Under the pieces are notes generated by a model, which saw only the letters and a program-made list of their open reading frames with translations, had not been told where the DNA came from and did no database searches. From IMG/VR virus record IMGVR_UViG_3300022745_000017, positions 62,001-126,000 of that record: a stretch of DNA of 64,000 nucleotides; one strand, given 5' to 3'. Below, one piece after another: positions 5,097 to 62,643 of the stretch. Both the position numbers and the translations under genes were made by a program. How positions within the stretch are numbered: position 1 is the stretch's first letter; every line of letters begins with the position of its first letter.

Positions 5097-5109
5097 ATTA
5101 TATTTCAAA

Positions 5110-5119
5110 CACATATCAC
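5110..5119 (+). promoter_or_regulatory. Putative early (virion-RNAP) promoter CACATATCAC
   Basis: The same 10-mer occurs at 10070, 46635 and 47988, with CACATATTAC at 34141. It resembles the phiKZ early consensus TATATTAC and always precedes accessory genes. Confidence 0.7.
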
Positions 5120-5170
5120 TCTTGTGAGCACATGGGTAACTGTGCTTACTTACTGTAGTAAAGGAAGAAA

Positions 5171-5731
5171 ATGCGAAATCTAAATTGCACTATTGATGTC
5201 TCATATTTTAGTGATGTTAGTGGTCCCGCGCCCTGGCTGTTACCTCATCTGGACTGCGGCATGGGATCTATTCTGCGACTACCTCTTACCGAAGTTATGT
5301 TTCCAAAGATGAGAAGTGCTGCGATTGACTTTCAGCAGAGTCTCATCAAAGGCAATGCGCTAGACGCCGTGGGGAAAATTCTCTTATGCCTAAATGAATG
5401 GGATGAGATTGAAATCTCTGCTTACGCAACGGTTGGATATAGTTGGTTAGCTAGTTGCTATGCTAAAACACAGAGTGTGGCTGACAAGTTTCTAGTGAGT
5501 GGGCAGTATATTCGCAAGGAGCTATCTGATTATTACAACCATATTTACGCTGTGTGGCGCGATAAACAAACCAATGATGAAACAATAGAGAGTCTGTACA
5601 ACCGTGTTGGGAAGGCGCTTCGAAATATGTTGTTCATGGTCTATACCCTGACCAACAACAATGAAGCGCTGGCGACTACGCTTATGGGGGAGTATGTAGA
5701 TACCCTAGCTGAGCAATTAGCCAAAGCGTAA
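5171..5731 (+). CDS. Hypothetical protein (AT-rich moron-like insert)
   Basis: 186-aa ORF with its own promoter, AAGGA RBS and downstream hairpin. Confidence 0.7.
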   Translation: MRNLNCTIDVSYFSDVSGPAPWLLPHLDCGMGSILRLPLTEVMFPKMRSAAIDFQQSLIKGNALDAVGKILLCLNEWDEIEISAYATVGYSWLASCYAKTQSVADKFLVSGQYIRKELSDYYNHIYAVWRDKQTNDETIESLYNRVGKALRNMLFMVYTLTNNNEALATTLMGEYVDTLAEQLAKA

Positions 5732-5743
5732 TTACTCACGGTG

Positions 5744-5776
5744 CTGATACCTCGGCTAACTTAGCCGAGGTATCAG
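5744..5776 (+). terminator. 16-bp inverted repeat
   Basis: ctgatacctcggctaa-c-ttagccgaggtatcag just after the stop codon. Confidence 0.65.
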
Positions 5777-5794
5777 TGACTTATTTGATCCTAT

Positions 5795-5871
5795 TTTTCT
5801 TCAGTCACATATATCGGTAGTGAGTTGGTAATGATGCTACGCTGACTCATATCCTTTAATGCATCAAGGAG
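5795..5871 (+). ncRNA. Conserved promoter plus pseudoknotted 5' leader, copy 1
   Basis: P1 5821-5828/5842-5849; loop TGATGC 5832-5837 complementary to GCATCA 5861-5866; GGAG 5868-5871. Homologous to 12967-13037 and 59450-59526. Confidence 0.65.
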
Positions 5872-5878
5872 TTCTATC

Positions 5879-6322
5879 ATGGCTACAAAGTTTTCCCTGA
5901 GTGCAGCAGACTTCTGCTTGTCTGAAGAGCAAATCGCTGCTGTCAATCTGACCGTGGAAATGGGAAGCGAGGCTTCGGCCCGCTTCCATCAGAAGTACGC
6001 TGCTTTGCGAGTGGTGCTCTTGCCGGCATTTGTGCCGGCGCGTTTGAAGGCCCTGCGTGATGTCGGTGTCCAAGCCGTCCCCGTGGAAGCAGGCACAATT
6101 GAAGTGCACCTTCCACTCATCGCATGGCTGAAGGCCAGTCCTAGCTGGGATGTGCCGGCAGTGCCAGCCCCATCGAGCCGGGGTTACACTCGGTCTACGA
6201 CCACTTCACTCGGTGAAGTGGTTACAGTCATTGTGGTCGCTGCGGTGTGTTACGCCGCCATCTTCTACATCGCGCGCGGCATCGTCCGCGCGCTCGACGG
6301 TGAGCATGACCGAGCAGCCTGA
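5879..6322 (+). CDS. Hypothetical protein with C-terminal transmembrane helix
   Basis: 147 aa; hydrophobic VVTVIVVAAVCYAAIFYIA; GGAG RBS. Confidence 0.75.
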   Translation: MATKFSLSAADFCLSEEQIAAVNLTVEMGSEASARFHQKYAALRVVLLPAFVPARLKALRDVGVQAVPVEAGTIEVHLPLIAWLKASPSWDVPAVPAPSSRGYTRSTTTSLGEVVTVIVVAAVCYAAIFYIARGIVRALDGEHDRAA

Positions 6323-10054: not shown

Positions 10055-10069
10055 TCAATTTTTTACAAA

Positions 10070-10079
10070 CACATATCAC
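10070..10079 (+). promoter_or_regulatory. Putative early promoter CACATATCAC
   Basis: Exact copy of the repeated motif, ahead of the accessory island. Confidence 0.7.
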
Positions 10080-10108
10080 AACAATACAATGTCTTAAGAA
10101 AGGACACT

Positions 10109-10468
10109 ATGTTAACAGGCATCAATGAGCGATTGATAGTCGTCAAGACTTGTATCTTGACCGATGCGGTTGAGCCAGCGACTATAGACGCTGCCATGGC
10201 ATTTTTAAGTTTAATGGCAATAAGTCAGCCTAGGAGCATTGGGTTCTACAACACTGGTATGTTGGTTGAGTTTATCGTGTCTCGTAAAGATTACCCAACA
10301 GAGACCAGTGCCAAGATCACCTACCCTAAGTGCGTGGTAGGTTTGCCAGACGGACGCCTGTCAATGATGTTTTTAGTGCCCTTCCATTCAAAAACTACCT
10401 TCGACTACGCCAAAAGTAAGTCGGAGTTTATCGGCGACCAACCCTCTAACTTTGGAGAAAAACGATGA
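10109..10468 (+). CDS. Hypothetical protein
   Basis: 119 aa, AGAAAGGA RBS. Confidence 0.65.
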   Translation: MLTGINERLIVVKTCILTDAVEPATIDAAMAFLSLMAISQPRSIGFYNTGMLVEFIVSRKDYPTETSAKITYPKCVVGLPDGRLSMMFLVPFHSKTTFDYAKSKSEFIGDQPSNFGEKR

Positions 10469-12613: not shown

Positions 12614-12961
12614 ATGATCACCCGTTTTACGATCTTCATACACACCCCCGAGTCAAAGACACTTGTGGAACAGCTCCCTGATGGTATTTCTCTGAGTTAT
12701 CCAGAAGTGCTGATGGACAGCCAGGCTGACTTAGAGACGTTCTTGATCAAAGACTTAGGTATCCCGAAGGCTGCCGAAATTGCTTGGTTCAATGATGCTT
12801 TTTGTATGGTTCACATTCGTGTCGACCCGTCGGTAAACCAGATGCTGGCTTTGCGCAAGTATTGGCCTGACATCGCTGGCTTACCGTGGGATGATGCTAG
12901 GACACGCCGGTTTGTACATCGCCCAATTGACCTCACTAAGAAGAATAGTTCGAACCTATAA
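12614..12961 (+). CDS. Hypothetical protein
   Basis: Start moved to MITRFT after the GAGGA/AGGG RBS. Confidence 0.65.
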   Translation: MITRFTIFIHTPESKTLVEQLPDGISLSYPEVLMDSQADLETFLIKDLGIPKAAEIAWFNDAFCMVHIRVDPSVNQMLALRKYWPDIAGLPWDDARTRRFVHRPIDLTKKNSSNL

Positions 12962-12966
12962 AAACA

Positions 12967-13037
12967 CAGTCACATATGCCGTTAGTGACTTGAGTAATGA
13001 TGCTAGCTTGAGTCACTCACTAATGTGCATCACGGAG
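12967..13037 (+). ncRNA. Conserved promoter plus pseudoknotted leader, copy 2
   Basis: P1 12984-12994/13007-13017; TGATGC 12998-13003 with GCATCA 13027-13032; GGAG 13034-13037. Confidence 0.6.
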
Positions 13038-13043
13038 ATAGAT

Positions 13044-13469
13044 ATGGCTAAGAAAGAGTTGGTTCGTGTGCGAGCTTTCCTTCAAAACGAAGAGGGTAAG
13101 TATCTCGTACTGTACCGCAAGTACAGTGAAAAGAAGGTGATCATGTGCCTGCCGGGTGGTGGCGTGGAAGAGGGTGAAGATCCCCTGCAAGCGTTGCACC
13201 GCGAGGTGCAAGAAGAAGTATCGTTACGGCTGAAAAGCCCGGTACACATCGGTGATCATTGTGTGCCAGGCGCGTATGAAGGGTATGAGAATACCCGATT
13301 TAGCTTCTATAGCGCGGGATGGGATGGGGAAGTCTTCATGCCACCCCAAGAGGTGGCTAAGCACGCCGGCTACGAATGGCTCACTAAATCTGAGATCGAG
13401 TGGGGTGGGGCGCTTAAGGTGGGGCGCTGTACCGAATATGGGCACGGCATTCTGTCGATGTTGGCTTAA
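13044..13469 (+). CDS. Nudix hydrolase
   Basis: Nudix box LPGGGVEEGEDPLQALHREVQEEVSL; start MAKKELV after GGAG. Confidence 0.9.
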   Translation: MAKKELVRVRAFLQNEEGKYLVLYRKYSEKKVIMCLPGGGVEEGEDPLQALHREVQEEVSLRLKSPVHIGDHCVPGAYEGYENTRFSFYSAGWDGEVFMPPQEVAKHAGYEWLTKSEIEWGGALKVGRCTEYGHGILSMLA

Positions 13470-34057: not shown

Positions 34058-34140
34058 GATAACTTCCTTTAAGGTAAGTGTGGTGGTAGACAAACTATAC
34101 TCAAGGTAGTTACTTTTTGATGAATCTAAAAATCTGTGTC

Positions 34141-34150
34141 CACATATTAC
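34141..34150 (+). promoter_or_regulatory. Putative early promoter CACATATTAC
   Basis: Closest to phiKZ TATATTAC; 40 nt before the dTMP kinase start. Confidence 0.7.
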
Positions 34151-34189
34151 CTAACTGGTACAGTGGGTACTTTTATGAGGTAAATTCAA

Positions 34190-34939
34190 ATGGATGATCT
34201 GAAACAAGTCAACTCGTTGCGTGCTCCCTTTGTCGTCGTCGAAGGGCCTGATGGATGTGGCAAGTCCACAATCGTTAAGCAGCTCAAAGAGATGCTCTCA
34301 GAGATGTCTCTCGTGCGCGTGGATGGTACGTTACAGGCGTGTGATGTTTATACCACCCGGCAACCAGAAGGCGTCTACCGAGAGATTTTGCTCAAATCGT
34401 TTGCGCCGGACAGCACGGAGTCACCTGTGGATCAAGCGATGCTAGCGATCCTGTCTCGTCGCAAGAGCTACTTCGGTGATATTTTGCCTCGATTGGGGAA
34501 CAAACAAGTCGTTATCAGCGACCGCTGGGACATCTCGACGTTTGCGACCCAAGGGATCTACGGTGATCACGCACTTGATGTGGCCAAACTGGAAGCTGTC
34601 AGTGGTAAGCTGGTTCCTGATTACTACATCCATGTACGCGCGAAGTTTGAGACTTGCATGGAGCGTACACGCGGGCGTAGCGATAACAACGAATTCGAAG
34701 TGCATCACACCGATGAAGCCAAACTCAGAAAGCTCCACGAGGCTTATGACACACTGAGTACAGGCTACTACCAGTTTGCAGTGGACTGGATGCCCACGTA
34801 TATGTTTGGTAATGAAAACACAAGGCATCTGCTCGTGCGAAATGATCCATTGGTGGAGGGCAGGCCGCTAGATCGTGACTTGAAAACCATTGCTCGCTTG
34901 ATTTATAACAAGTGGCGCAATGCTGTTCAGGGTGGTTAA
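34190..34939 (+). CDS. tmk: Thymidylate (dTMP) kinase
   Basis: VVVEGPDGCGKST P-loop, TRQP, ISDRW, PDYYIHV. Confidence 0.9.
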   Translation: MDDLKQVNSLRAPFVVVEGPDGCGKSTIVKQLKEMLSEMSLVRVDGTLQACDVYTTRQPEGVYREILLKSFAPDSTESPVDQAMLAILSRRKSYFGDILPRLGNKQVVISDRWDISTFATQGIYGDHALDVAKLEAVSGKLVPDYYIHVRAKFETCMERTRGRSDNNEFEVHHTDEAKLRKLHEAYDTLSTGYYQFAVDWMPTYMFGNENTRHLLVRNDPLVEGRPLDRDLKTIARLIYNKWRNAVQGG

Positions 34940-38191: not shown

Positions 38192-38520
38192 GGGTCGTGT
38201 GAATGGCTGTGTGTACCTACTACTATCCAACTGGGGTAGGGTAGGTACACTCCTTACCACTTACTTATTTCTTTGTCTATCAAAGAGTGACTTCCAGTAG
38301 AGACTAAGAAGTGAGGAGGGGATGGAGATCCCCTCCTATAAATAAGAGTTTATCCACACACATAACCCCTACCCCACCTACCAACCACTCCTACAAATGA
38401 GAAGAGAGTTAACAAGACATAACAATGCACGTATCCATATCTTTTTAAACATATATCATGCTGTAGTACACAAACAGGTGTACTACCTATCCATCCCTTA
38501 CTCAAAAGGAAAAGACTATC

Positions 38521-38667
38521 ATGGTCAGTATCTTCAACCCTTATGTCTTTATGAATGTCATGCTCACTCCCTGGCTGTGGCCAGCACTGAGTGTGATGGT
38601 CGCCGTAGAGGCAGCAGAGCGACTGAGCGATGAGCTCTCTGGCAAACCCAAGATGCCTATTCTTTAA
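38521..38667 (+). CDS. 48-aa small protein (not in the ORF track)
   Basis: MVSIFNPYVFMNVMLTPWLWPALSVMVAVEAAERLSDELSGKPKMPIL; AAAGGA RBS, promoter-like ACATATATCAT at 38449, hairpin after the stop. Confidence 0.6.
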   Translation: MVSIFNPYVFMNVMLTPWLWPALSVMVAVEAAERLSDELSGKPKMPIL

Positions 38668-45042: not shown

Positions 45043-46632
45043 ATGGAATCTCTTTTATTGCCAACAGAGGTCACCTTTTCCTCACTCAGAGGACTGTCGA
45101 CTAACAAAGATCGACAGATTACAGATGGGGTTCTGCGAGTGATTCTCGCAGGCGACTACGCTGGGGCACTGATTTCAAGCGGAGTGAAGTATTACTCTTT
45201 TAACCCCAACAAACTCATTGATGAGTCTAGTGAGCGAGACTTTCCAATAAAGCCACAGCCCTTTAACCTCAGTGATCCGAGACTCTTTATTAAAGATGGC
45301 TGGATCTGGTTGAAGTGGTTGGAACCCCAGTGTTATCACGAGATCAAACTCTGTCAAAGTGAAGGAGTCATTAGCGATCCAACTACTACGTCACACGGCA
45401 GACCATTGATAGGGTATCTGGCTGAGGGCTTGCGACTATCCAGACAACAACTCCAAAAGGACAAACATTCTGAGGAGTGGTTCCATCAGCTACAAGTGCT
45501 CATCGGGTACATCCTGGCAGTAAACAGCTTTAATCAAATGCACTTTTCGGGCTACAAAGAAAAGCCCAATCTGGAGTTCTCTATGTCTGAACAAAAACAC
45601 TTCCATTTCCCCAAGATCCCCGACTTCTACAAAGCTCAGCGTGATATGCGCAAGTATTGTGAGTACAAGAAGATCCCTCTGCCCGTTCAGCGGTTTCGTG
45701 GCACCCCTAAGCTGCATGGAACCAATGCGGGGGTGTTGATGAGCTTGCGAACCAAAGAGATCTATGCGGTCTCTCGTGAGCAAATCCTCAGTGACCAACT
45801 CCCCTTGGGTGGCTTTTACGCTCACTTCAAGGAAAACGAAAACTTCTATCGCATCTATCTCGAAGCCATGGTGGATAGTTTGCCACACAGTGAGAATGCG
45901 ACACATGTCGGTGTGTGGGGTGAGTGGGTTGGTGCTGGTGTTCAAGCGCTGTTTAACAAGGCCGCCATCTCCAAGATCCCCAAGACACACATTCTCTTGC
46001 GCGGTGCGTTCATCACTGACCGAGGTGAAAAGGAATCACTGAAAGAGTGGTTCCACCGCATCAACCACGATTTCTGGATCAACGCGGTGGACGACTTGCT
46101 GCCGTGTGCAAGGCACATCTTCGAGTTCCCTTGCCTGGAAGTCGAGGTGGACTTCACAAAGCCCGATGCGATCCAAAACGAACTGGTAGTCTATACCCAG
46201 GCTTACGAGAAAGAGTGTCCTGTGGCAGCTACCTACGGGATCAACGGCGTGGGTGAAGGCATCGTTTGGCACAATGTGCCTGATGGTGGGGATTGGCCTG
46301 ACATCACTTTCAAGGTCAAGGGCCAAGAGCACAGCAAGTCGCATGTACGACCCCTGGATGCGAAGAACCAAGATAAGGTGGAAGCCATCAATCGGTTCGT
46401 AACCGAAGCTGCTTCACCGATGCGCATGTCTGAGATCGCGCAGAAGATGAAAGACAATGGCTACGAGCTGATTTACGAATACCGAAATGTCTTCGTGGGT
46501 CGTGTGTGTAAAGACATCCACGATGAAGAGGCGTGGAAGCTGGAAAACACGGACATTGGTTGGGGCAACTGTACACCGGGGATTGTGCGTATCGCGCACA
46601 ACTGGTGGGCTGAGCTAACCAAGATGGCTTAA
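45043..46632 (+). CDS. Rnl2-family RNA ligase with a 180-aa N-terminal extension
   Basis: Motif I PKLHGTN, motif III WGEW, motif IV GEGIV, motif V FKVKG; internal GGAG-ATG at 45583. Confidence 0.85.
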   Translation: MESLLLPTEVTFSSLRGLSTNKDRQITDGVLRVILAGDYAGALISSGVKYYSFNPNKLIDESSERDFPIKPQPFNLSDPRLFIKDGWIWLKWLEPQCYHEIKLCQSEGVISDPTTTSHGRPLIGYLAEGLRLSRQQLQKDKHSEEWFHQLQVLIGYILAVNSFNQMHFSGYKEKPNLEFSMSEQKHFHFPKIPDFYKAQRDMRKYCEYKKIPLPVQRFRGTPKLHGTNAGVLMSLRTKEIYAVSREQILSDQLPLGGFYAHFKENENFYRIYLEAMVDSLPHSENATHVGVWGEWVGAGVQALFNKAAISKIPKTHILLRGAFITDRGEKESLKEWFHRINHDFWINAVDDLLPCARHIFEFPCLEVEVDFTKPDAIQNELVVYTQAYEKECPVAATYGINGVGEGIVWHNVPDGGDWPDITFKVKGQEHSKSHVRPLDAKNQDKVEAINRFVTEAASPMRMSEIAQKMKDNGYELIYEYRNVFVGRVCKDIHDEEAWKLENTDIGWGNCTPGIVRIAHNWWAELTKMA

Positions 46633-46634
46633 AG

Positions 46635-46675
46635 CACATATCACCACAGTGGTGAGGAGAAACCCTCACCACTGT
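46635..46675 (+). promoter_or_regulatory. Early promoter CACATATCAC plus 5' hairpin
   Basis: Motif 46635-46644; acagtggtgagg/cctcaccactgt. Confidence 0.65.
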
Positions 46676-46701
46676 TTCAAACTACATTGAGGTACATGAA
46701 A

Positions 46702-47505
46702 ATGACTGAAGAACACTTATATCAACAACGTGTTGATTACGAAGCACGGCGTCACGAAATGATAAGAAAACTAAAACGGTATCGGTTAGTTGCCGAAAAA
46801 ATGCCCCGGCAACTACTAGAGAAAGACTTCGTTAAAGAAGACGCTGCCTTTTGCCGAATTGCTGACTACTGTCAGAGAACAGCTGATAGTTTTGGCTTTA
46901 CTGAAAATAAGCACGCCAGAGAAGAGGTGTTGGCTTACCTCAATCGTTTCTATCTGCGCAAGATAAAGGCGCGGGCTTGTCCAGAAATAGCCAAACACAA
47001 TCGGCGCTTGCTCGATAACATCTTGGCAAAGCAGTCCGGTATGTCTATTTTTGCCAAATGTGACGATGAAGAAGAGCTGGTGATACGCAACATCATTGGT
47101 GAGTCGATTGACTGGCATTTGCGACCTAAGCATTGGTTCGACTATGGTGGTGGTCATATTTACTACAAATTGGGTTGGCTAGACTACCTGAGACTACATC
47201 CGTTAGAGCAGTACGAAGATAGCCAACGGATAGAATATGAAATGGAGGGGGGTACGACAAAAACTGTCAAAGAACTCAAAGGCTTAGATCCAAGTACGGC
47301 ACACCGCTGGTTCAAGTATTGCTTGGCCAAGTTAGAAGAGTACACCAAAGGAACCAGCCAAGAACAAAAGGTTTGGTTCCGTAAAGAAAATGTGCTCACC
47401 AAGTTCGAAGCTCTAGAGTATGTGTATTTCGTACTCGATCTGAAAACCATTCGGATCGTAGTGCAACTAGACTGCTTTGCAGCCGAGGTACTAGACTCGG
47501 TGTAA
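46702..47505 (+). CDS. Hypothetical protein
   Basis: Start chosen at GAGG spacing; basic, helical. Confidence 0.7.
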   Translation: MTEEHLYQQRVDYEARRHEMIRKLKRYRLVAEKMPRQLLEKDFVKEDAAFCRIADYCQRTADSFGFTENKHAREEVLAYLNRFYLRKIKARACPEIAKHNRRLLDNILAKQSGMSIFAKCDDEEELVIRNIIGESIDWHLRPKHWFDYGGGHIYYKLGWLDYLRLHPLEQYEDSQRIEYEMEGGTTKTVKELKGLDPSTAHRWFKYCLAKLEEYTKGTSQEQKVWFRKENVLTKFEALEYVYFVLDLKTIRIVVQLDCFAAEVLDSV

Positions 47506-47969: not shown

Positions 47970-47987
47970 CACCCAAAAAGTTTAAGC

Positions 47988-48036
47988 CACATATCACTCA
48001 CTTGGTGCGGTCGCGCAGACATGCACCAAGTGAGTG
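47988..48036 (+). promoter_or_regulatory. Early promoter CACATATCAC plus 14-bp hairpin
   Basis: Motif 47988-47997; cactcacttggtgc/gcaccaagtgagtg. Confidence 0.65.
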
Positions 48037-48077
48037 TTTAGCTCATTTATTTTCTACCCCTGTAAGAAGGATTAACA

Positions 48078-49385
48078 ATGTTCGAATTGATCAAAGAATA
48101 CCCCACCCTCTCTGCTGCGATTGGTATGGCCAGTGTCACCGTCATCGGGATGGGTCGGCAGTTTCTAACCATGGCGGTCAGTAAGTTGTCGGGCTTGTAT
48201 AAACACGAGTTTAGCATCGACAGCGACAATGTGCTGTTTTCAAGCCTGCTTCAATATATCAAGGAAAATGTGCGCGGCGTTCGCAGCTTTAAGGTGACTA
48301 ACTTTTTCGCTGGAGATATGGTAGCCCACGGCAACTGGATTACAAATGATTTTGAATATCGTGAATTGGTCGTTAACTTAATACCTGAGAATATAGCCGG
48401 TATTTTGCGATTAGGCGGTGTTTTATACATCATTCGTGTTAGTGCTACTGAGTCTCGGATTGCCGGCACAGGAACAAATTCTTTAACCACGCAGAAAACA
48501 CGTATTACAATTACCGCTTTCACCAGTGACCTGGAAAAAGCTAAACTCATATTTGAACAGGTAAATAATCGTAATCGGGCGCGTGAATCAAAAGCATTGA
48601 AATACTGTAACTCAAAAGGTGCAATTTATATCCTAAGGGATCAAAACGTGAGAGAGCGCAAGAATCTCCGCCACTTTGAAAATTTAGCAGTAAAGGCATG
48701 CATCACGGAGGAGCTCATCGCTGACATTCGCAAGTTCATGGATGCACAAGATACCTATCATCGCACTGGCTGTACATGGAAGCGTATTTATCTGCTGCAC
48801 GGTCCTAGCGGCACTGGCAAGACTTCTTTGGCGATGGCAGCAGCAAACCATTTCAGAAGTGATATTTACTATATCCAGATGGGCTTGATCAGAAGTGGTA
48901 GCTTCAGTGAAACACTCAACCAGTGTGGGAAATTTAAGTTCATCCTGATTGATGACATCACTTCATCTGGGCTTGACTTGTCTGACAGCGAAGAGTCGGT
49001 TAAAGCGAGCGAAAGCTTACTGCTAAGACAACCAACCTTGGCTGAGATCTTGACAGGTCTGGACGGCCCCGATAGCCCTGAAGCACAAATCATCTTCATC
49101 ACCACTAACCACATCAATCGCTTGTCGGATAACTTTGTTCGCACAGGTCGCATCGACAAAGCGTTCTTGATTGGCAATGCTGGTCAAGAAGAGCAACGCA
49201 AGATCGCTGCGATGTACTACGATACGGTAGTTCCAGGGGTAGATGCATATATCAAGCCTTCTCGCGTGGTAGAGATCGTTCGAAGCGCAGAGAGTGCTGA
49301 GCAGGCTCAAGCTGCACTGGAGGTGGAGGTCGTCAATAACCCAGGGATCGGGTACGAGCAAGAATACACGGTCAAGCTGGACTAA
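48078..49385 (+). CDS. BCS1-like membrane-anchored AAA+ ATPase, copy 1
   Basis: N-terminal hydrophobic helix, HGPSGTGKTS, ILIDD, ITTNH, RTGRID. Confidence 0.85.
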   Translation: MFELIKEYPTLSAAIGMASVTVIGMGRQFLTMAVSKLSGLYKHEFSIDSDNVLFSSLLQYIKENVRGVRSFKVTNFFAGDMVAHGNWITNDFEYRELVVNLIPENIAGILRLGGVLYIIRVSATESRIAGTGTNSLTTQKTRITITAFTSDLEKAKLIFEQVNNRNRARESKALKYCNSKGAIYILRDQNVRERKNLRHFENLAVKACITEELIADIRKFMDAQDTYHRTGCTWKRIYLLHGPSGTGKTSLAMAAANHFRSDIYYIQMGLIRSGSFSETLNQCGKFKFILIDDITSSGLDLSDSEESVKASESLLLRQPTLAEILTGLDGPDSPEAQIIFITTNHINRLSDNFVRTGRIDKAFLIGNAGQEEQRKIAAMYYDTVVPGVDAYIKPSRVVEIVRSAESAEQAQAALEVEVVNNPGIGYEQEYTVKLD

Positions 49386-58145: not shown

Positions 58146-58769
58146 ATGAAATATGATCTCTTTAGCCTTATGGACTGGACTTCTATTCCTCCCCAAATGA
58201 CTGAATACGTTGCTGGGGATGATGTCTTTGTTTTGCCAACTGGTTTGAGCTTGTACCGTATACACCGTGGCATCTACTGCATCGATGCTACTAATAACGT
58301 AAAGCTAAGAAACATACTCGAAAAGGATCGATTTTACGATAGTCGGTTTGAATCCGTCGCGCAGTTGTACCGGTATGTGGCAAACAAAATCCGGCATAAC
58401 CAAGATTACTTGAGCGCTAACCACTTGCGCATCAAGGGCGGTCCTAAGGTTGCTTTTAATAAGAGCGATGAGATTTTTGCTTCGTTCGGTGTTGTAAAGC
58501 CTGAAGGGATTGGCATTATAGCTTCTCGGTCACATAAAGGGCATGTGGCGCTTCGTTACTATGTACCTGTACGTCTTCGAAAGTATAACGGAGGAGATAT
58601 AGATGTCAAAAAGACCCTGGTGCATGAACCCCAAGCACAAGCTGCACACATGCAAGAAATCCTAGACTTGTTTGCAGAACTTAACAAGACGTTCATCGAA
58701 ATGCTTTTGGCTGACTTCAAACAAAGCCAGGAGCAGCTCAGAAACGATCCCACAGTCATCACCAGATAA
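58146..58769 (+). CDS. Member 3 of the paralog array
   Basis: MKYDLFSLMDWTSIPP, VLPTG, YLSANHL, VPVRLRKY, LLADF. Confidence 0.8.
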   Translation: MKYDLFSLMDWTSIPPQMTEYVAGDDVFVLPTGLSLYRIHRGIYCIDATNNVKLRNILEKDRFYDSRFESVAQLYRYVANKIRHNQDYLSANHLRIKGGPKVAFNKSDEIFASFGVVKPEGIGIIASRSHKGHVALRYYVPVRLRKYNGGDIDVKKTLVHEPQAQAAHMQEILDLFAELNKTFIEMLLADFKQSQEQLRNDPTVITR

Positions 58770-58808: not shown

Positions 58809-59444
58809 ATGAACTATGACCTCTTTACATTGATGCCTTGGCGTTCAATTCCGCCTACTCTCATCAACCGGTTTATCGGTGATGACAGCTATGTCTTGCC
58901 AATGGGTATTAGCTTGAGCGTGAGCTCAGATCGAAAGAGGGCTTACATTCACATCAGTACAGCAAACGCTGCTTATGACACTCTGAAGGTCAAACAAATC
59001 GGTGTGCGACGAGAAGATCTCGCTGATGCATACACCGATATGGCTGCTAAGCTAGCAGTCGATGAAGCCTATCTGCAAGCAAATCAGCTCACACCTAACC
59101 GAGTGTTTGCTAAAACAGATACGTTTACCAAGCAGATGCTTGACAAAGTCGGTGTGCAAGTCAGTGGCTACCGTGTAACGATCTCTGAGCAAAATAACCC
59201 CCGGCTAAAAGCACAGCTCATACGGGTGTCACGCCACATCCCTAAGCGCTTGCAAGCTTATTCAGACGGTAAGGAGTGTCTGATCTGTTACCACTGGCCT
59301 GTGGACTTTACAACCAAAGACTTACGGCGCACACTGAGCTACTTTGAGTGGAAATTCAAGGAGTATGAAGACAAACTGATGAAGGATTTCGAGCTGCTGC
59401 GTGAGCGAGTTCGTGCGAGAAAACAAAGTGGCGCGGTGTTGTAA
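58809..59444 (+). CDS. Member 4 of the paralog array
   Basis: MNYDLFTLMPWRSIPP, VLPMG, YLQANQL, IPKRLQAY, LMKDF. Confidence 0.8.
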   Translation: MNYDLFTLMPWRSIPPTLINRFIGDDSYVLPMGISLSVSSDRKRAYIHISTANAAYDTLKVKQIGVRREDLADAYTDMAAKLAVDEAYLQANQLTPNRVFAKTDTFTKQMLDKVGVQVSGYRVTISEQNNPRLKAQLIRVSRHIPKRLQAYSDGKECLICYHWPVDFTTKDLRRTLSYFEWKFKEYEDKLMKDFELLRERVRARKQSGAVL

Positions 59445-59449
59445 TACAG

Positions 59450-59526
59450 TTTTCTTCAGTCACATATATCGTCAGTGTGTTAGTGATGATGCTAATCTGA
59501 CACACTCCTTTATCTGCATCGTGGAG
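59450..59526 (+). ncRNA. Conserved promoter plus pseudoknotted leader, copy 3
   Basis: P1 59474-59483/59497-59506; TGATGC 59487-59492 with GCATCG 59516-59521; GGAG 59523-59526. Confidence 0.65.
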
Positions 59527-59532
59527 ATTGAA

Positions 59533-59631
59533 ATGAAAAACGTACTGATTACCGCAAGCCTGGTCAACGTGCTGACCAAGTTGACGGGTTGGTGGCTGGA
59601 GCTAGGCTGGGACGGTGAGTGGTGTACGTGA
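59533..59631 (+). CDS. 32-aa Trp-rich peptide
   Basis: MKNVLITASLVNVLTKLTGWWLELGWDGEWCT; GGAG RBS, own promoter/leader and terminator. Confidence 0.6.
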   Translation: MKNVLITASLVNVLTKLTGWWLELGWDGEWCT

Positions 59632-59638
59632 AGCGTTG

Positions 59639-59686
59639 AGTACAGACAGGGGCTAGCTAGCCCCTGTCTGTACTATCTTTTTTTCT
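59639..59686 (+). terminator. 36-bp perfect palindrome plus T-run
   Basis: agtacagacaggggctagctagcccctgtctgtact at 59639-59674. Confidence 0.75.
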
Positions 59687-59752: not shown

Positions 59753-61744
59753 ATGTCTGTTACCGAATCTGAAAAGCTCCCATATCAAGAATTCTTGCAA
59801 AAGGCCGTGGGGATTATTGGCACACTCCCTTTGATACCACTCAACGATTTCACCAACGGTGACGAGCATTTCTATATCGATCTGAGTCCCGTGTCCCGCC
59901 TCTGTAATGCTGTTTTGGCCACAGCAGACCGTGTCACGGATGCCATCAAAAATCACGGGGTGAAAAAGATCTATGTCGGGATAGAAAACGTGCCGGTGAA
60001 CGAACCTGTTCGCCACGTCGTACTGGCTGATAATACCGTCGACTTGAACATGAGAGCGCCACTACTGCTCGAAGCTATTGATCACATTTTGAAAAACCGT
60101 CACCAAGGTCTGGTCATCCTGCACAACCCCGGCTTCAACACCACCATTTACCTGATTGAAAAAGCCATGACACCTGATACCCAAGTCGAAGAAAACAGCG
60201 TGCAACCCCTCTCCCATTTTACGATCACGCCGCAGCGATACATCTACATTTCCCCGAAAGCTACGGTGGAAAACTTGACATGCTTTATGGCTGACGCCAT
60301 GAGTCAGCATCTGAAGATAGATGGAAAAGCCTGTGTAGTACTCGGGCACACCACCTTCAGCGACCAAACCCTCGTCAAGCCTGTATACAGCGTAACCGTC
60401 TCCGGTACTTTGAATCAATTGGAGGAAGTTGTTGGGTCTTTGGTTAAGCGAGTCCGAAATGATAAAGACTGCTTTTTGGTCGTCACCAATATGGGCGGCT
60501 CCCCTACCGGCGACACCTTCCTTTTACTAAAGCGAGTCGAAATGCCTGAAAATACCCTGGCTAATACCATGAATCAACCAGCGGCACCCAAACGATTAGT
60601 GCGGCTGTTTGCAAACCCCGAGATAGTCAACAGCGTTATTATCAACGCGGTGCTCGAAGCCTTTACAGACATGCGTAACGGGGGCGTTGACTCGATTACT
60701 GTGGACACTACAGTCAATCCACATGAAGGACAAGAACTTTGCAAGGTGCACACTCTGGACCGCGCAAACCTGAATGGCACTGATATCGAACGCTACGTCA
60801 TGTGGGTGTGGACTCAGCATTTCCACCGTGTGATCTTCAGCATTGATGACGGTAGCGGCCAATATAGCGTTGAGGCCTATCGGTATAACCCGACGTACAC
60901 CACTGGATCGAACGTGGTGGAGCAAGCACCGCCCACCCAGACATATCCTGCCAAGCTGGATTTGGTCGCCGACCAACAGTTGGGGTTCACTGCTTTGGAA
61001 AGCCAGATCAAAGAGGCGTTCCCTGGCATCTATTTGGGTCAAACACAAATTAGCTGTGTGGCCAAGTCCAATGATTGCCCAGCAGGATGGATGGAAGAAA
61101 CCACCCACGCCATCGATACGAAAGAGCTAACCATCGAGCTAATTCTTGGTGAGGCCAAGAAGATTTACATGAAGCAGTTCGACAAACTCACCGTCACGCA
61201 CAGTGGTAGTTGGTGTATGCTGCGGCAATGGAAATATGTCGCAGTAACTACTGCTGCTGAGGAAAAAGCAGAACCGGTGCCGGAACCCGCAGCTGCGACC
61301 GATACACAGCCCACACCGGCGGAGCCTGCGTTCAAACGCCGGCGTGCTGATGTCTTGGTGAAAAAGATGCTCATGTGCACACGGGTGCTGTACAAGGACA
61401 GTGAGTTCATCACCATTCGTGTCTTAAGCGCGGAGCATAAAGAAACCATCACACTCCCGAATGGGTTGGTTGTGCGTCTCGGCAACTGCTTTGATACACG
61501 GGTGATGGCGCTGACGGGTCGTCACAATACCACGGACAAACCTGCTGCTAATTTCGAAACCTTCATCGATGCCAATAAGCTGGAGCCTGTCCAGCTTTAT
61601 TGGGTGCGCAGCATCAACAACAAAGAGCGCTGGCAAGACATCGAAGGCATGAAGTTTTCAACGGAGGACCTCTCGCAGCTTCTACAACAATACAGCAGTT
61701 TGGTGAGCGTTGCTCTCGATGGGCGTGTGTCTTACCTCGCTTGA
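59753..61744 (+). CDS. Large modular hypothetical protein
   Basis: Start MSVTESEK after GGAAAG; about four alpha/beta blocks separated by P/Q/T/E-rich linkers. Confidence 0.75.
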   Translation: MSVTESEKLPYQEFLQKAVGIIGTLPLIPLNDFTNGDEHFYIDLSPVSRLCNAVLATADRVTDAIKNHGVKKIYVGIENVPVNEPVRHVVLADNTVDLNMRAPLLLEAIDHILKNRHQGLVILHNPGFNTTIYLIEKAMTPDTQVEENSVQPLSHFTITPQRYIYISPKATVENLTCFMADAMSQHLKIDGKACVVLGHTTFSDQTLVKPVYSVTVSGTLNQLEEVVGSLVKRVRNDKDCFLVVTNMGGSPTGDTFLLLKRVEMPENTLANTMNQPAAPKRLVRLFANPEIVNSVIINAVLEAFTDMRNGGVDSITVDTTVNPHEGQELCKVHTLDRANLNGTDIERYVMWVWTQHFHRVIFSIDDGSGQYSVEAYRYNPTYTTGSNVVEQAPPTQTYPAKLDLVADQQLGFTALESQIKEAFPGIYLGQTQISCVAKSNDCPAGWMEETTHAIDTKELTIELILGEAKKIYMKQFDKLTVTHSGSWCMLRQWKYVAVTTAAEEKAEPVPEPAAATDTQPTPAEPAFKRRRADVLVKKMLMCTRVLYKDSEFITIRVLSAEHKETITLPNGLVVRLGNCFDTRVMALTGRHNTTDKPAANFETFIDANKLEPVQLYWVRSINNKERWQDIEGMKFSTEDLSQLLQQYSSLVSVALDGRVSYLA

Positions 61745-61791
61745 TCAACCGGGGGCTTAGGCCCCCATTTCTTTACTCTGGAGCGTTTGAA

Positions 61792-62643
61792 ATGGAAAAA
61801 CCAGTCATTGGTACTGAAATCGGCCAATACCTGTTTGGTGTGTATCACAACGGCGATGATGTGCGTGTCAAGCTGTTTGTGCAAATCCCTCCCAATGGGG
61901 CCGATGAAAACAAAGAAGGTGTTTGGCTGGATGAGCATACAGAGCTGCTGTACAAACTCACTCTTAAAGACATCGGTGGTCCTGCTGTTTTCCGCCGTGT
62001 TAATCAAGATGGTGAAGATTACTACACACCGCTCTTGTCCGATTTTGAGCGTGATGATGTCAAGGCTGCCATCATTGCACTAGCCACTTCTGCTCAGGTT
62101 TCTTACTCGCAAAAGTCACTAGCAGAAGCACTGACTGCTTGCTATAGCCACTACGCTGATTACGTCTACATGCTCTCGCAGTCTCGTCAAAGTACACCTG
62201 AAAAACAGGATGATGATGTCTGTTTGCCCATTGATTACCCACGTCTTGTCGACGTGTATGGAATTGGCAAGGAGCTGGTGCTGGTGGACGCCTCTGGCAA
62301 GACAATCCCAGAAAAGACAAGTCAGCGGTTTGTAGGCGTGATTACATCGGCACAGATCTTTACCAGTGTCAAGCAAAATGGTACGCTAATGATGCTAGAC
62401 GCACCATATGTGCGTTTTACGGCATCAAAAAAGGTCGGCCACGAACCGAGCTTTGTCGCACTGGTTCGACTTAACACCACAGCACACCCTGGGGCCGATC
62501 AGGTTTGCTGGGAAGACGCCAATGTCGAGGAAGACTACTGGGCCGATGCTCGCCAGTACCTTTGGCTAATGGGCAATAAAAATCCAGTTCTCAAGAACAT
62601 CAGGACAGAAAATCCCGGTGTTGACTGGAGTGTCTGGCAATGA
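61792..62643 (+). CDS. Hypothetical protein
   Basis: Start moved to MEKPVIG after GGAG. Confidence 0.75.
   Translation: MEKPVIGTEIGQYLFGVYHNGDDVRVKLFVQIPPNGADENKEGVWLDEHTELLYKLTLKDIGGPAVFRRVNQDGEDYYTPLLSDFERDDVKAAIIALATSAQVSYSQKSLAEALTACYSHYADYVYMLSQSRQSTPEKQDDDVCLPIDYPRLVDVYGIGKELVLVDASGKTIPEKTSQRFVGVITSAQIFTSVKQNGTLMMLDAPYVRFTASKKVGHEPSFVALVRLNTTAHPGADQVCWEDANVEEDYWADARQYLWLMGNKNPVLKNIRTENPGVDWSVWQ

What the first reader, a model, noticed from the sequence alone, without database searches (positions are those of the whole stretch)
5795..5881. Three dispersed copies of a promoter plus pseudoknotted leader RNA abutting the Shine-Dalgarno (candidate new cis-regulatory RNA or mobile regulatory cassette)
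Seen: 5795-5881, 12967-13046 and 59450-59535 share CAGTCACATAT(ATC/GCC)G, a stem, a 12-13-nt loop T(A/G)ATGATGCTA, a 9-11-nt linker, GCATC(A/G), one base, GGAG, and an ATG 6-7 nt later. The stem sequence differs between copies but pairing is kept (tgagttgg/ctgactca; agtgacttgag/cttgagtcact; agtgtgttag/ctgacacact), always with G-U wobble(s) near the loop. Loop TGATGC pairs with the GCATC(A/G) that ends 1 nt before the SD, which gives an H-type pseudoknot. The three downstream genes are unrelated: a membrane protein, a Nudix hydrolase and a 32-aa peptide. Known: pseudoknots at the SD are the architecture of SAM-II/V, SAM-SAH, preQ1 and NAD+-II riboswitches and of the T4 gene 32 operator, and mobile promoter-stem-loop cassettes (PeSL) occur in T4-type phages. 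I cannot match this sequence to a riboswitch consensus I recall. Inference: a translational switch (ligand- or phage-protein-controlled) spread as a cassette.
Basis: partly seen in the sequence, partly recalled or inferred. Interest (0 to 1): 0.88.

Follow-up and report, generated by a model that had tools for sequence, protein, structure and literature searches.

The report
Pseudoknotted leader on phage early genes
An uncultivated giant (phiKZ-like) phage places the same promoter plus a folded, pseudoknotted RNA leader in front of at least eleven unrelated small genes; the fold is backed by compensatory mutations and matches no catalogued RNA family, but what it does is still inferred.

Summary
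The window is part of a 218-kb chimallivirus-like contig. It holds the three copies, and eight more lie just downstream on the same genome. Each copy has a conserved promoter box (CAGTCACATAT), a hairpin P1 of 6-13 bp, and a 10-13-nt loop. Five loop bases (P2) pair with five bases that end 1-4 nt before GGAG, and the start codon follows 5-8 nt later. Both helices covary. In P1, 8 of 10 pairs show double changes. P2 is paired in 54 of 55 cells, with three of five pairs switching (GAUGC/GCAUC, GGUGU/ACACC, AGUGC/GCACU). No shuffle reached these values. Rfam gives nothing, even with permissive settings. The box is a clade-wide promoter of related jumbo phages, probably the early promoter read by the virion RNA polymerase, not part of a private mobile cassette. 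Those phages keep a 5' hairpin but lack P2. The variable linker and the unrelated downstream genes argue against a riboswitch. Best reading: a shared 5' leader of early transcripts, a 5' hairpin docked onto the pre-SD segment, that acts on mRNA stability and translation initiation and may be a common operator. The structure is well supported. The function is inferred.

The parts
5746..5774 (+). terminator-like palindromic hairpin after gene 5171-5731, upstream of copy c1
   Evidence: read; terminator-like hairpins are enriched in this genome region
5787..5814 (+). c1 extended promoter: GATCCTA, T-rich run, box CAGTCACATATAT
   Evidence: same layout in all copies and in other jumbo-phage contigs
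5820..5829 (+). c1 P1 5' arm (GTGAGTTGGT)
5833..5837 (+). c1 P2 5' strand GATGC inside the P1 loop (loop 5830-5840)
5841..5850 (+). c1 P1 3' arm (GCTGACTCAT)
5851..5860 (+). c1 linker L3, unconserved and G-poor
5861..5865 (+). c1 P2 3' strand GCATC
5868..5871 (+). c1 Shine-Dalgarno GGAG
5879..6322 (+). c1 downstream gene, 147 aa, C-terminal hydrophobic segment, no family match
12952..12979 (+). c2 extended promoter: GAACCTA, A/T-rich run, box CAGTCACATATGC
12984..12995 (+). c2 P1 5' arm (AGTGACTTGAGT)
12999..13003 (+). c2 P2 5' strand GATGC (loop 12996-13005)
13006..13017 (+). c2 P1 3' arm (GCTTGAGTCACT)
13018..13026 (+). c2 linker L3
13027..13031 (+). c2 P2 3' strand GCATC
13034..13037 (+). 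c2 Shine-Dalgarno GGAG
13044..13469 (+). c2 downstream gene, Nudix hydrolase, 141 aa
   Evidence: Pfam PF00293 at E 1.4e-15; phrog_1198
59443..59469 (+). c3 extended promoter (AATACAG, T-run, box CAGTCACATATAT); overlaps the stop codon of gene 58809-59444
59474..59483 (+). c3 P1 5' arm (AGTGTGTTAG)
59488..59492 (+). c3 P2 5' strand GATGC (loop 59484-59496)
59497..59506 (+). c3 P1 3' arm (CTGACACACT)
59507..59515 (+). c3 linker L3
59516..59520 (+). c3 P2 3' strand GCATC
59523..59526 (+). c3 Shine-Dalgarno GGAG
59533..59631 (+). c3 downstream gene, 32-aa peptide, also called as a gene in an independent ENA assembly
59639..59674 (+). strong intrinsic-terminator-like hairpin plus T-run that closes the c3 unit
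   Evidence: L199:1558-1593; offset 58081

Best explanation
This is the common 5' leader of one promoter class of an uncultivated chimallivirus-like jumbo phage. That class is most likely the early genes read by the injected virion RNA polymerase.

The extended promoter (GATYCTA, a T-rich run, CAGTCACATAT) fires about 6-8 nt downstream of ACATAT, so the transcript begins at or a few bases before P1 (RGUGA...). P1 forms a 5'-proximal hairpin. Five bases of its loop (R-R-U-G-Y) pair with five bases (R-C-A-Y-Y) that end 1-4 nt before the SD. The whole untranslated leader is thereby closed into an H-type pseudoknot, and only GGAG, the spacer and the start codon are left single-stranded.

I infer that it acts after transcription. 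The 5' hairpin shields the 5' end from 5'-end-dependent decay. The pseudoknot fixes the geometry of the ribosome-binding site directly behind the SD, where structured operators dock on the 30S platform. Eleven unrelated early mRNAs would then be translated, and probably later switched off, as one group through one shared RNA element.

Shown: the copies, the fold and its covariation, and the absence of the fold from Rfam and from other phages that carry the same promoter box. Inferred: the temporal class, the start site, and every functional step.
For: - Eleven copies lie on one genome, and each starts a gene.
- P1 is 93.5% paired, with 8 of 10 pairs changed on both sides. P2 is 98.2% paired, with 3 of 5 pairs changed on both sides and one G-U intermediate. 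At most 1 of 500 shuffles reaches any observed measure (0 of 500 for four of the five), and slid controls pair in only 28-44% of cells. P2 was not part of the model that made the alignment.
- G-U pairs are frequent, so only the sense strand can fold this way.
- The distance from P2 to the SD is held at 1-4 nt and from the SD to the start codon at 5-8 nt. L3 varies from 6 to 14 nt and is unconserved. This ties the element to the ribosome-binding site.
- Loop bases A62, U63, U69 and U96 are invariant although P1 and L3 have diverged. That indicates selection beyond base pairing.
- Eight copies lie among clustered small genes; nine of the eleven downstream genes match no family, one is a 32-aa peptide, and several units are bounded by terminator-like hairpins. 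Sigma-70-like sites are not enriched.
- Jumbo phages with their own RNA polymerases have a conserved AT-rich motif centred near -10 upstream of early operons (PMC7598289).
- Other jumbo-phage contigs carry the same box followed by a 5' hairpin that starts at the same distance; Vibrio phage phiKT1019 has a similar box and hairpin.
Against: - No transcript data exist, so the start site, the temporal class and the RNA fold in vivo are all untested.
- Single-sequence folding energies are unremarkable (z -0.6 to -1.5).
- Nested-fold estimates of SD accessibility vary from 0.16 to 0.78 and show no consistent effect of P2.
- P1 length and L3 length are anticorrelated (their sum is about 19-23 nt). 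Copy A, with a 13-bp P1 and a 6-nt L3, would be sterically taut.
- Copy K has an uncompensated A-C at the terminal P2 pair.
- P2 haplotypes cluster physically (D, G, E; C, F), so independent covariation events are few, about three.
- Only one genome carries the element, and the other assemblies of it are 100% identical.
- A box-like promoter before thyA has a short unstructured leader, so the box does not require the fold.
Confidence: 0.55

Rival explanations
1. Shared operator for a trans-acting phage protein. A repressor, or a nuclease guide in the manner of T4 RegA/RegB, would recognise the pseudoknot and shut off (or activate) the whole early class. The RNA would be a protein-binding site, not a self-sufficient stabiliser or enhancer.
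For: - Unpaired loop bases are invariant while P1 and L3 have drifted.
- Eleven unrelated genes share one element.
- The SD is an invariant GGAG in 10 of 11 copies. T4 RegB cleaves GGAG in early mRNAs (PMC1702504).
- Related loop sequences (CAAT[A/G]GTG) recur in other phages that carry the same promoter box.
Against: - No candidate RNA-binding protein was identified.
- Early mRNAs must be translatable before any new phage protein exists, so the unbound state must be ON.
- The invariant bases could equally be tertiary contacts within the RNA.
Confidence: 0.2
2. Promoter plus an ordinary 5' stabilising hairpin only. The loop/pre-SD complementarity would have been inherited by duplication and would have no function.
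For: - Other phages with the same box have only a hairpin.
- Class II promoters in this window have plain hairpins.
- Folding z-scores are weak.
- P2 haplotypes cluster physically, as expected after local duplication.
Against: - Three of the five P2 pairs changed on both strands while keeping Watson-Crick pairing, and a G-U intermediate is present. 54 of 55 cells are paired against 28-44% in the slid controls.
- L3, which lies between the two strands, has diverged freely, so the copies are not recent duplicates.
Confidence: 0.08
3. Ligand-sensing riboswitch of the SD-proximal pseudoknot type (like SAM-II/V, preQ1, NAD+-II, guanidine-III).
For: - It is a small H-type pseudoknot next to the SD.
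- A few loop bases are invariant.
- One downstream gene is a Nudix hydrolase.
Against: - No Rfam match, even at E up to 10.
- L3 and P1 vary in length and sequence, so no conserved binding pocket is evident.
- The SD is not inside P2.
- The downstream genes are functionally unrelated ORFans.
- Eleven copies sit behind one promoter class in a single genome.
Confidence: 0.05
4. Leader mini-ORF. The loop reads AUG-(A/G)UG-(C/U)U(A/G), 6-8 nt after an SD-like RGUGA, in most copies. A 4-11-codon peptide (M-M/V-L...) would be translated. P2 would mask its start codon, or its translation would open the leader.
For: - An in-frame start codon is kept in all 11 loops (ATG or GTG at columns 65-67).
- The stop codon falls after 4 codons in c1, c2, c3 and D, and after 8 in A, E and F (read).
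- The spacing from RGUGA to AUG is 6-8 nt.
Against: - The putative SD is buried in P1.
- ORF lengths are inconsistent. In C the ORF runs into the main ORF, and in G it runs on out of frame.
- Stop codons in AT-rich linkers are expected by chance.
- This reading does not explain the compensatory changes in the pre-SD strand.
Confidence: 0.07
5. Recombination module in the PeSL sense, or a nascent-RNA signal for the phage RNA polymerase (put-like). In the first case the conserved cassette exists mainly to shuffle early genes. In the second it acts on transcription, not on translation.
For: - The units are terminator-promoter-leader-gene, and homology stops sharply at the ATG.
- Paralogous HExxH genes sit behind copies A and C.
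- PeSLs are composite terminator/promoter motifs that flank variable genes (PMC4122927).
- In phiKZ, sequence downstream of the start site matters for its RNA polymerase (PMC7598289).
Against: - Covariation shows selection on an RNA fold, which recombination does not require.
- The fixed P2-SD distance points to the ribosome, not to the polymerase.
- No related genome is available to reveal exchanges.
- Each gene has its own terminator and promoter, which argues against antitermination.
Confidence: 0.05

Closest known systems
PeSL (promoter-early stem-loop) cassettes of T4-type phages (PMC2839356, PMC4122927)
   Same: - Many dispersed copies of a conserved regulatory module stand in front of small, variable, mostly unknown early genes.
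- A terminator-like hairpin and T-run lie directly upstream of the promoter.
- Homology ends at the gene start.
   Different: - The PeSL stem-loop is the terminator upstream of a sigma-70 promoter. Here the conserved structure lies downstream of the promoter in the 5' UTR and is a covarying pseudoknot.
- The promoter is not sigma-70-like.
- Recombination was not tested.
T4 post-transcriptional control of early mRNAs: gene 32 leader pseudoknot, RegA, RegB (PMC3014915, PMC1702504)
   Same: - A phage 5'-leader pseudoknot lies upstream of the ribosome-binding site.
- A whole class of early mRNAs is controlled through a shared short RNA feature at or near GGAG.
   Different: - The gene 32 pseudoknot is a single autogenous operator, separated from the ribosome-binding site by an unstructured tract.
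- RegA and RegB sites are short single-stranded sequences.
- No sequence similarity was seen and no protein partner was found here.
SD-proximal H-type pseudoknot riboswitches (SAM-II/V, preQ1-II/III, NAD+-II, guanidine-III)
   Same: The topology and size match (about 50-60 nt), and the 3' strand of the second helix lies next to the SD.
   Different: - In those families the SD is part of the helix, and L1/L3 carry the conserved ligand pocket.
- Here the SD lies 1-4 nt outside P2 and L3 is unconserved.
- The downstream genes are unrelated and Rfam is negative.
Structured operators that dock on the 30S platform (rpsO/S15 pseudoknot, thrS operator). This comparison rests on my own knowledge.
   Same: A compact fold lies immediately 5' of an exposed SD and AUG, compatible with 30S binding without unfolding.
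   Different: Those are single-gene autoregulatory sites with known protein ligands. This is a multi-copy element with no known ligand.
Early (virion RNA polymerase) promoters of phiKZ-like jumbo phages (PMC7598289, PMC8244752)
   Same: - A highly conserved AT-rich motif with an upstream T-rich part precedes clustered early operons and is found by sequence alone.
- It does not resemble the host sigma-70 consensus.
   Different: - The motif sequence differs from phiKZ.
- phiKZ 5' UTRs are mostly 31-40 nt, and the paper read here (PMC8244752) describes no conserved leader fold. Here the leader is about 60 nt and folded.
5'-terminal stabiliser hairpins (ompA leader, T7 phi10 leader). This comparison rests on my own knowledge.
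   Same: A hairpin at or within a few nt of the 5' end of the mRNA is followed by a strong ribosome-binding site.
   Different: Those hairpins have no loop-to-pre-SD pairing and no conserved loop.

Membership tests
H-type RNA pseudoknot (structural class) | Stem 1 hairpin supported by covariation | tested here: met
   P1 is 93.5% paired and 8 of 10 pairs changed on both sides. RNAalifold finds it independently.
H-type RNA pseudoknot (structural class) | Loop bases of stem 1 pair with a segment 3' of the hairpin, supported by covariation | tested here: met
   P2 (columns 64-68 with 97-101) is 98.2% paired and 3 of 5 pairs changed on both sides. Slid controls pair in 28-44% of cells. P2 was not in the model that made the alignment.
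H-type RNA pseudoknot (structural class) | Loop lengths sterically compatible with both helices at once | tested here: inconclusive
   L1 is 3-4 nt, L2 2-4 nt and L3 6-14 nt for a P1 of 6-13 bp. This is plausible for most copies but taut in copy A. No 3D modelling or probing was done.
Known Rfam families, including SAM-II/V, preQ1, NAD+-II, guanidine-III and fluoride | Match to the family covariance model | tested here: not met
   No match at gathering score in the 64-kb window. At E up to 10 on four copies, only chance miRNA/lncRNA matches appeared.
SD-sequestering pseudoknot riboswitch | The SD is part of the pseudoknot helix | tested here: not met
   GGAG lies 1-4 nt 3' of P2 in all copies.
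SD-sequestering pseudoknot riboswitch | Conserved pocket nucleotides in the connecting loops, and genes related to one metabolite | tested here: not met
   L3 is unconserved in length and sequence. The downstream genes are unrelated ORFans plus one Nudix.
SD-sequestering pseudoknot riboswitch | Ligand-dependent conformational change | not testable with these tools
   Needs in-line probing or ITC.
PeSL cassette (T4-type) | Composite terminator stem-loop directly upstream of the promoter | tested here: met
   Terminator-like hairpins number 40 against 16.9 expected. Several sit directly before boxes D, G, B and K and after the c3 and E genes.
PeSL cassette (T4-type) | Near-consensus sigma-70 early promoter | tested here: not met
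   Sigma-70-like sites number 21 against 20.5 expected, and none coincides with the box.
PeSL cassette (T4-type) | Gene insertions, deletions or swaps bounded by the cassettes between close relatives | not testable with these tools
   No close relative exists. The best DNA polymerase identities are 34% in IMG/VR, 46% in GenBank phages and 54% in the 5.8-billion-protein set. Other assemblies of this phage are identical.
Jumbo-phage early (virion RNA polymerase) promoter | Conserved AT-rich motif upstream of clustered early operons, in a phage that encodes multisubunit RNA polymerases | tested here: met
   The box with its T-rich upstream part lies before 11 genes, 8 of them in a 24-kb cluster of small ORFans. 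An RNA polymerase beta-like subunit is in the window. The same box occurs in other jumbo contigs.
Jumbo-phage early (virion RNA polymerase) promoter | Early, protein-synthesis-independent transcription from a mapped start site | not testable with these tools
   The phage is uncultivated and no RNA data exist.
T4 gene 32-type autogenous operator | Single copy on the regulator's own mRNA, with a pseudoknot followed by an unstructured AU-rich tract reaching the ribosome-binding site | tested here: not met
   There are eleven copies on unrelated genes, and P2 abuts the SD.

The most novel reading that the evidence does not exclude
The leader is a class tag for the first mRNAs of a nucleus-forming jumbo phage. 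A fold, with its conserved loop (also seen without P2 in related phages), would be read by an injected or very early phage factor, or directly by the host 30S subunit. That would give early transcripts privileged handling: export from the early infection compartment, protection from a phage-induced mRNA decay programme (one copy drives a Nudix hydrolase), or preferential ribosome loading. This would be a new post-transcriptional layer in chimallivirus infection.
Probability: 0.15. Interest if true: 0.85.

Novelty: new variant of a known kind. Interest (0 to 1): 0.6.

Why it matters
Gene expression in jumbo phages that carry their own RNA polymerases is understood mainly at the level of promoters. 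Little is known about what happens to their early mRNAs afterwards, although those mRNAs must outcompete host messages before any new phage protein exists.

Here is a compact, covariation-supported pseudoknot welded to one promoter class and repeated at least eleven times in one genome. It is a ready-made, synthesisable handle for asking how such phages stabilise, translate or later silence their early messages.

It also gives an uncatalogued RNA family. The promoter box and its 5' hairpin can be used to annotate probable early genes in related metagenomic jumbo phages.

If it proves to be only a stabiliser and ribosome-binding-site insulator, it is still a natural, portable 60-nt expression leader.

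Tried and rejected
- Rfam at gathering score on the window and at E up to 10 on four copies: nothing relevant.
- Megablast of the locus against GenBank phages: no match. The nearest DNA polymerase is 46% identical.
- Exact-pattern scans:
  - IMG/VR, loop...GCATCNNGGAG: only this contig has real copies, and the 18 other hits lack the box and hairpin.
  - The metagenome scan (box + loop) found only this contig plus three short contigs with a related loop and at best a 4-bp P2.
- Close relatives for orthologous covariation: none. IMG/VR gives 34% and the large protein set at most 54%. The polymerase loci of the three best relatives have ACATAT-core promoters with short leaders and no P1/P2. The DUF7448 neighbour has no homologue at all. 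Other assemblies of the phage are 100% identical.
- SD masking by nested folding, with and without the P2 strands blocked: inconsistent across copies, so no ON/OFF call can be made.
- A possible linker:SD helix (CU-rich L3 with GGAG): 4-6 bp by eye in c1, c3, A, D and F but 3 bp or fewer in the rest. Rejected as a general feature.
- The fourth loop match at 62377-62430: a nested hairpin inside an ORF with no box and no start codon. Rejected as a copy.
- Family searches of the downstream proteins for a common theme: none found.
- Not done:
  - About 135 kb of the contig was not read base by base. Only pattern scans covered it, so the count of 11 is a lower bound.
  - There was no pseudoknot-aware energy calculation and no R-scape.
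Full report
**What the window is.** PHROG searches place an RNA polymerase beta-like subunit, a DNA polymerase and several phiKZ-group families in the window. The DNA polymerase has 291 tblastn hits among GenBank jumbo phages of Pseudomonas, Erwinia, Vibrio, Ralstonia and others. The best is only 46% identical (Burkholderia phage FLC9), and megablast finds nothing. The window is bases 62004-126003 of IMG/VR contig IMGVR_UViG_3300022745_000017 (217,973 bp; also Ga0228698_1000013). Independent assemblies exist in ENA (ERZ27252001, 217,987 bp) and Logan, and they are 100% identical where compared. The closest relatives anywhere reach 50-54% DNA polymerase identity.

**Checking the observation.**
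- GATGC-N12-36-GCATCNNGGAG occurs three times against 0.01 expected.
- I wrote a descriptor that knows nothing of the sequence: a hairpin, a loop segment complementary to the bases just before GGAG, then a start codon. It scores the three copies 16-18 and everything else in the window 13 or less.
- Over 1.23 Mb of other fetched DNA, the top scores are again copies from this genome.

**More copies.** Pattern scans and a covariance model built from nine copies (R1) found eight further copies just beyond the window's 3' end: D, G, E, A, B, C, F and K. They lie in a ~24-kb stretch of small genes, so the genome has at least 11. The unread ~135 kb was covered only by exact-pattern scans, so 11 is a lower bound.

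**Anatomy.**
- Extended promoter: GATYCTA-like element, a T-rich run, and the box CAGTCACATAT (variants GGTAACATAT in B and CAATCACATAT in G).
- Then 4-8 nt, followed by P1 of 6-13 bp that often starts RGTGA.
- A loop of 10-13 nt made of L1 (RAU), the 5-nt P2 strand, and L2 (UA or UR).
- L3 of 6-14 nt, G-poor and unconserved.
- The 5-nt P2 partner, then 1-4 nt, then GGAG (AAGG in G).
- Then 5-8 nt and ATG or GTG.
- The spacer after GGAG is also similar in several copies (often ATTGAT).
- Homology ends at the start codon.

**Is the fold real?**
- RNAalifold on a plain MAFFT alignment recovers P1, with 7 of 10 pairs compensated.
- On the model-guided alignment of 11 distinct copies, P1 is 93.5% paired with 8 of 10 pairs changed on both sides.
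- P2 was not part of the model. It is paired in 54 of 55 cells, and three of its five pairs change on both sides: A-U in 6 copies and G-C in 5; C-G in 8 and U-A in 3; G-C in 8, A-U in 1, G-U in 1, and one A-C in copy K.
- Four haplotypes result: GAUGC/GCAUC, GGUGU/ACACC, AGUGC/GCACU, and the G-U intermediate GGUGC/GCACU.
- At most 1 of 500 shuffles reaches any observed measure (0 of 500 for four of the five), and sliding the partner by 1-3 columns drops pairing to 28-44%.
- Frequent G-U pairs mean the complementary strand could not form the structure. It is therefore an RNA fold of the sense strand, not a DNA cruciform.
- Caveats:
  - Haplotypes are physically clustered (D, G, E; C, F), so there are only about three independent events.
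  - All data come from one genome.
  - Single-sequence energies are ordinary.
  - P1 and L3 lengths are anticorrelated (their sum is about 19-23 nt), which leaves copy A taut.

**What the promoter part is.**
- The box is not private to this element. T-rich run plus CAGTCACATATA, often preceded by GATTCYAG, stands in front of genes in many other jumbo-sized IMG/VR contigs. A close variant (CAGATCTATATAA followed by a GGTGA... hairpin) sits in an intergenic gap of Vibrio phage phiKT1019.
- In most of these a hairpin begins at about the same distance from the box. Several loops resemble the ones here (CAATAGTG, CAATGGTG). None has a convincing partner before its SD.
- Within the window a second, shorter promoter type (aaACACATATCAC) precedes other genes, with plain hairpins or none.
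- Relatives at 50-54% polymerase identity also use an ACATAT core with short leaders.
- The literature states that RNA-polymerase-encoding jumbo phages have a conserved AT-rich motif centred near -10 upstream of early operons, read by the virion RNA polymerase (PMC7598289; PMC8244752).
- From this I infer that the box is this clade's early promoter, that the transcript starts at or just before P1, and that P2 is a lineage-specific addition to a clade-wide 5' hairpin.
- Sigma-70-like sites are not enriched (21 against 20.5 expected), while terminator-like hairpins are (40 against 16.9). Several of those sit immediately upstream of boxes. The units are therefore terminator-promoter-leader-gene.

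**What it most likely does.**
- The distances P2-SD and SD-start are held constant while L3 is free. This ties the element to the ribosome-binding site, not to the polymerase.
- The SD itself is not in a conserved helix, and nested-fold accessibility is inconsistent, so a simple SD-masking switch is not supported.
- Early mRNAs must work before any new phage protein is made, so the folded state should be translatable.
- My best reading has two parts. The 5' hairpin protects the 5' end. The pseudoknot packs the rest of the leader and presents a standard ribosome-binding site. This gives eleven unrelated messages the same stability and initiation behaviour.
- Loop bases (A62, U63, U69, U96) stay invariant against a background of diverged P1 and L3. 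That suggests either tertiary contacts or a trans-acting reader, so the operator model is the strongest rival.
- A riboswitch is unlikely. There is no Rfam match, no conserved pocket, and the genes are unrelated.
- A leader mini-ORF (AUG-RUG-YUR, 6-8 nt after RGUGA) is noted but cannot be separated from chance, and it does not explain the compensatory changes.

**Comparison with known systems.**
- In architecture it is closest to T4-type PeSL cassettes (PMC4122927). It fails their sigma-70 criterion, and its conserved structure lies on the other side of the promoter.
- In topology it resembles SD-proximal pseudoknot riboswitches and the T4 gene 32 operator. It fails their defining features (see the membership table).
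- I file it as a new RNA family of a known general kind: a structured 5' leader at the ribosome-binding site. Its unusual traits are multi-copy coupling to one phage promoter class and a pseudoknot that abuts the SD without including it.

**Verdict.**
- The structure is well supported.
- The function is inferred.
- The element is so far restricted to one uncultivated phage.
- Interest is moderate to high for phage RNA biology.

Noticed in passing
window 5103-5173, 10063-10111, 34130-34192, 38441-38523, 46628-46704, 47981-48080: There is a second promoter-like motif, (a/c)aACACATAT(C/A)AC. At four of the six sites it is followed 7-8 nt later by a plain 5' hairpin (none at 10071, only a weak one at 34142), then an SD and a start codon, with no loop/pre-SD pairing. 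The ACATAT core is also seen before genes in relatives with 50-54% DNA polymerase identity.
   Followed up: partly
window 62377-62430 (+), inside ORF 61600-62643: The sequence TAATGATGCTA ... GGCATCA recurs here. In this case GATGC/GCATC close a nested 19-bp hairpin. There is no promoter box, no GGAG and no start codon. It may be a relic or a coincidence.
   Followed up: partly
L199:16899-17357 and L199:18412-18924 (about 11-13 kb beyond the window's 3' end): Two paralogous small proteins with an HExxH motif (HEAVH, HELCH) each sit behind their own copy of the leader (A and C). Pfam gives only a sub-threshold metallopeptidase-toxin-like match (E 0.075).
   Followed up: partly
window 13044-13469; L199:16321-16521: The phage has a full Nudix hydrolase behind leader c2 and a second, 66-aa Nudix-domain ORF in the early cluster. 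A phage Nudix could act on RNA 5' ends, which might connect with the 5'-hairpin leaders. This was not tested.
   Followed up: no
L203:16840-16875: A box-like CAGCTAACATAT with a T-rich upstream run precedes thyA-DHFR-RNR with a ~25-nt unstructured leader. The promoter class therefore can occur without the pseudoknot.
   Followed up: partly
all 11 leader loops, e.g. window 5831-5845, 12997-13011, 59486-59500: The loop reads ATG-(A/G)TG-(C/T)T(A/G), 6-8 nt after an SD-like RGTGA, in most copies. This gives possible mini-ORFs of 4 codons (c1, c2, c3, D), 8 codons (A, E, F) or 11 codons (B). In copy C the GTG is in frame with the main ORF.
   Followed up: partly
window 58529-58616: A degenerate box GGTCACATAA is followed by a weak hairpin, GGAG and ATG inside ORF 58146-58769. 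The descriptor scored it 12.5. It may be an internal start or chance.
   Followed up: no
L152:696-800, L189:946-1051 (OGVH01 contigs), L188:2837-2943 (Ga0228699): Short metagenomic contigs carry the same box and a hairpin with the loop CAATGGTG. L152 has a possible 4-bp loop/pre-SD pairing (TGGT/ACCA, 1 nt before GGAG), while L189 has none. These may be the nearest outside relatives of the leader.
   Followed up: partly
window 45043-46632: A 529-aa protein with an RNA ligase family match (phrog_548, E 3e-30). This is another RNA-handling enzyme in the same phage.
   Followed up: no
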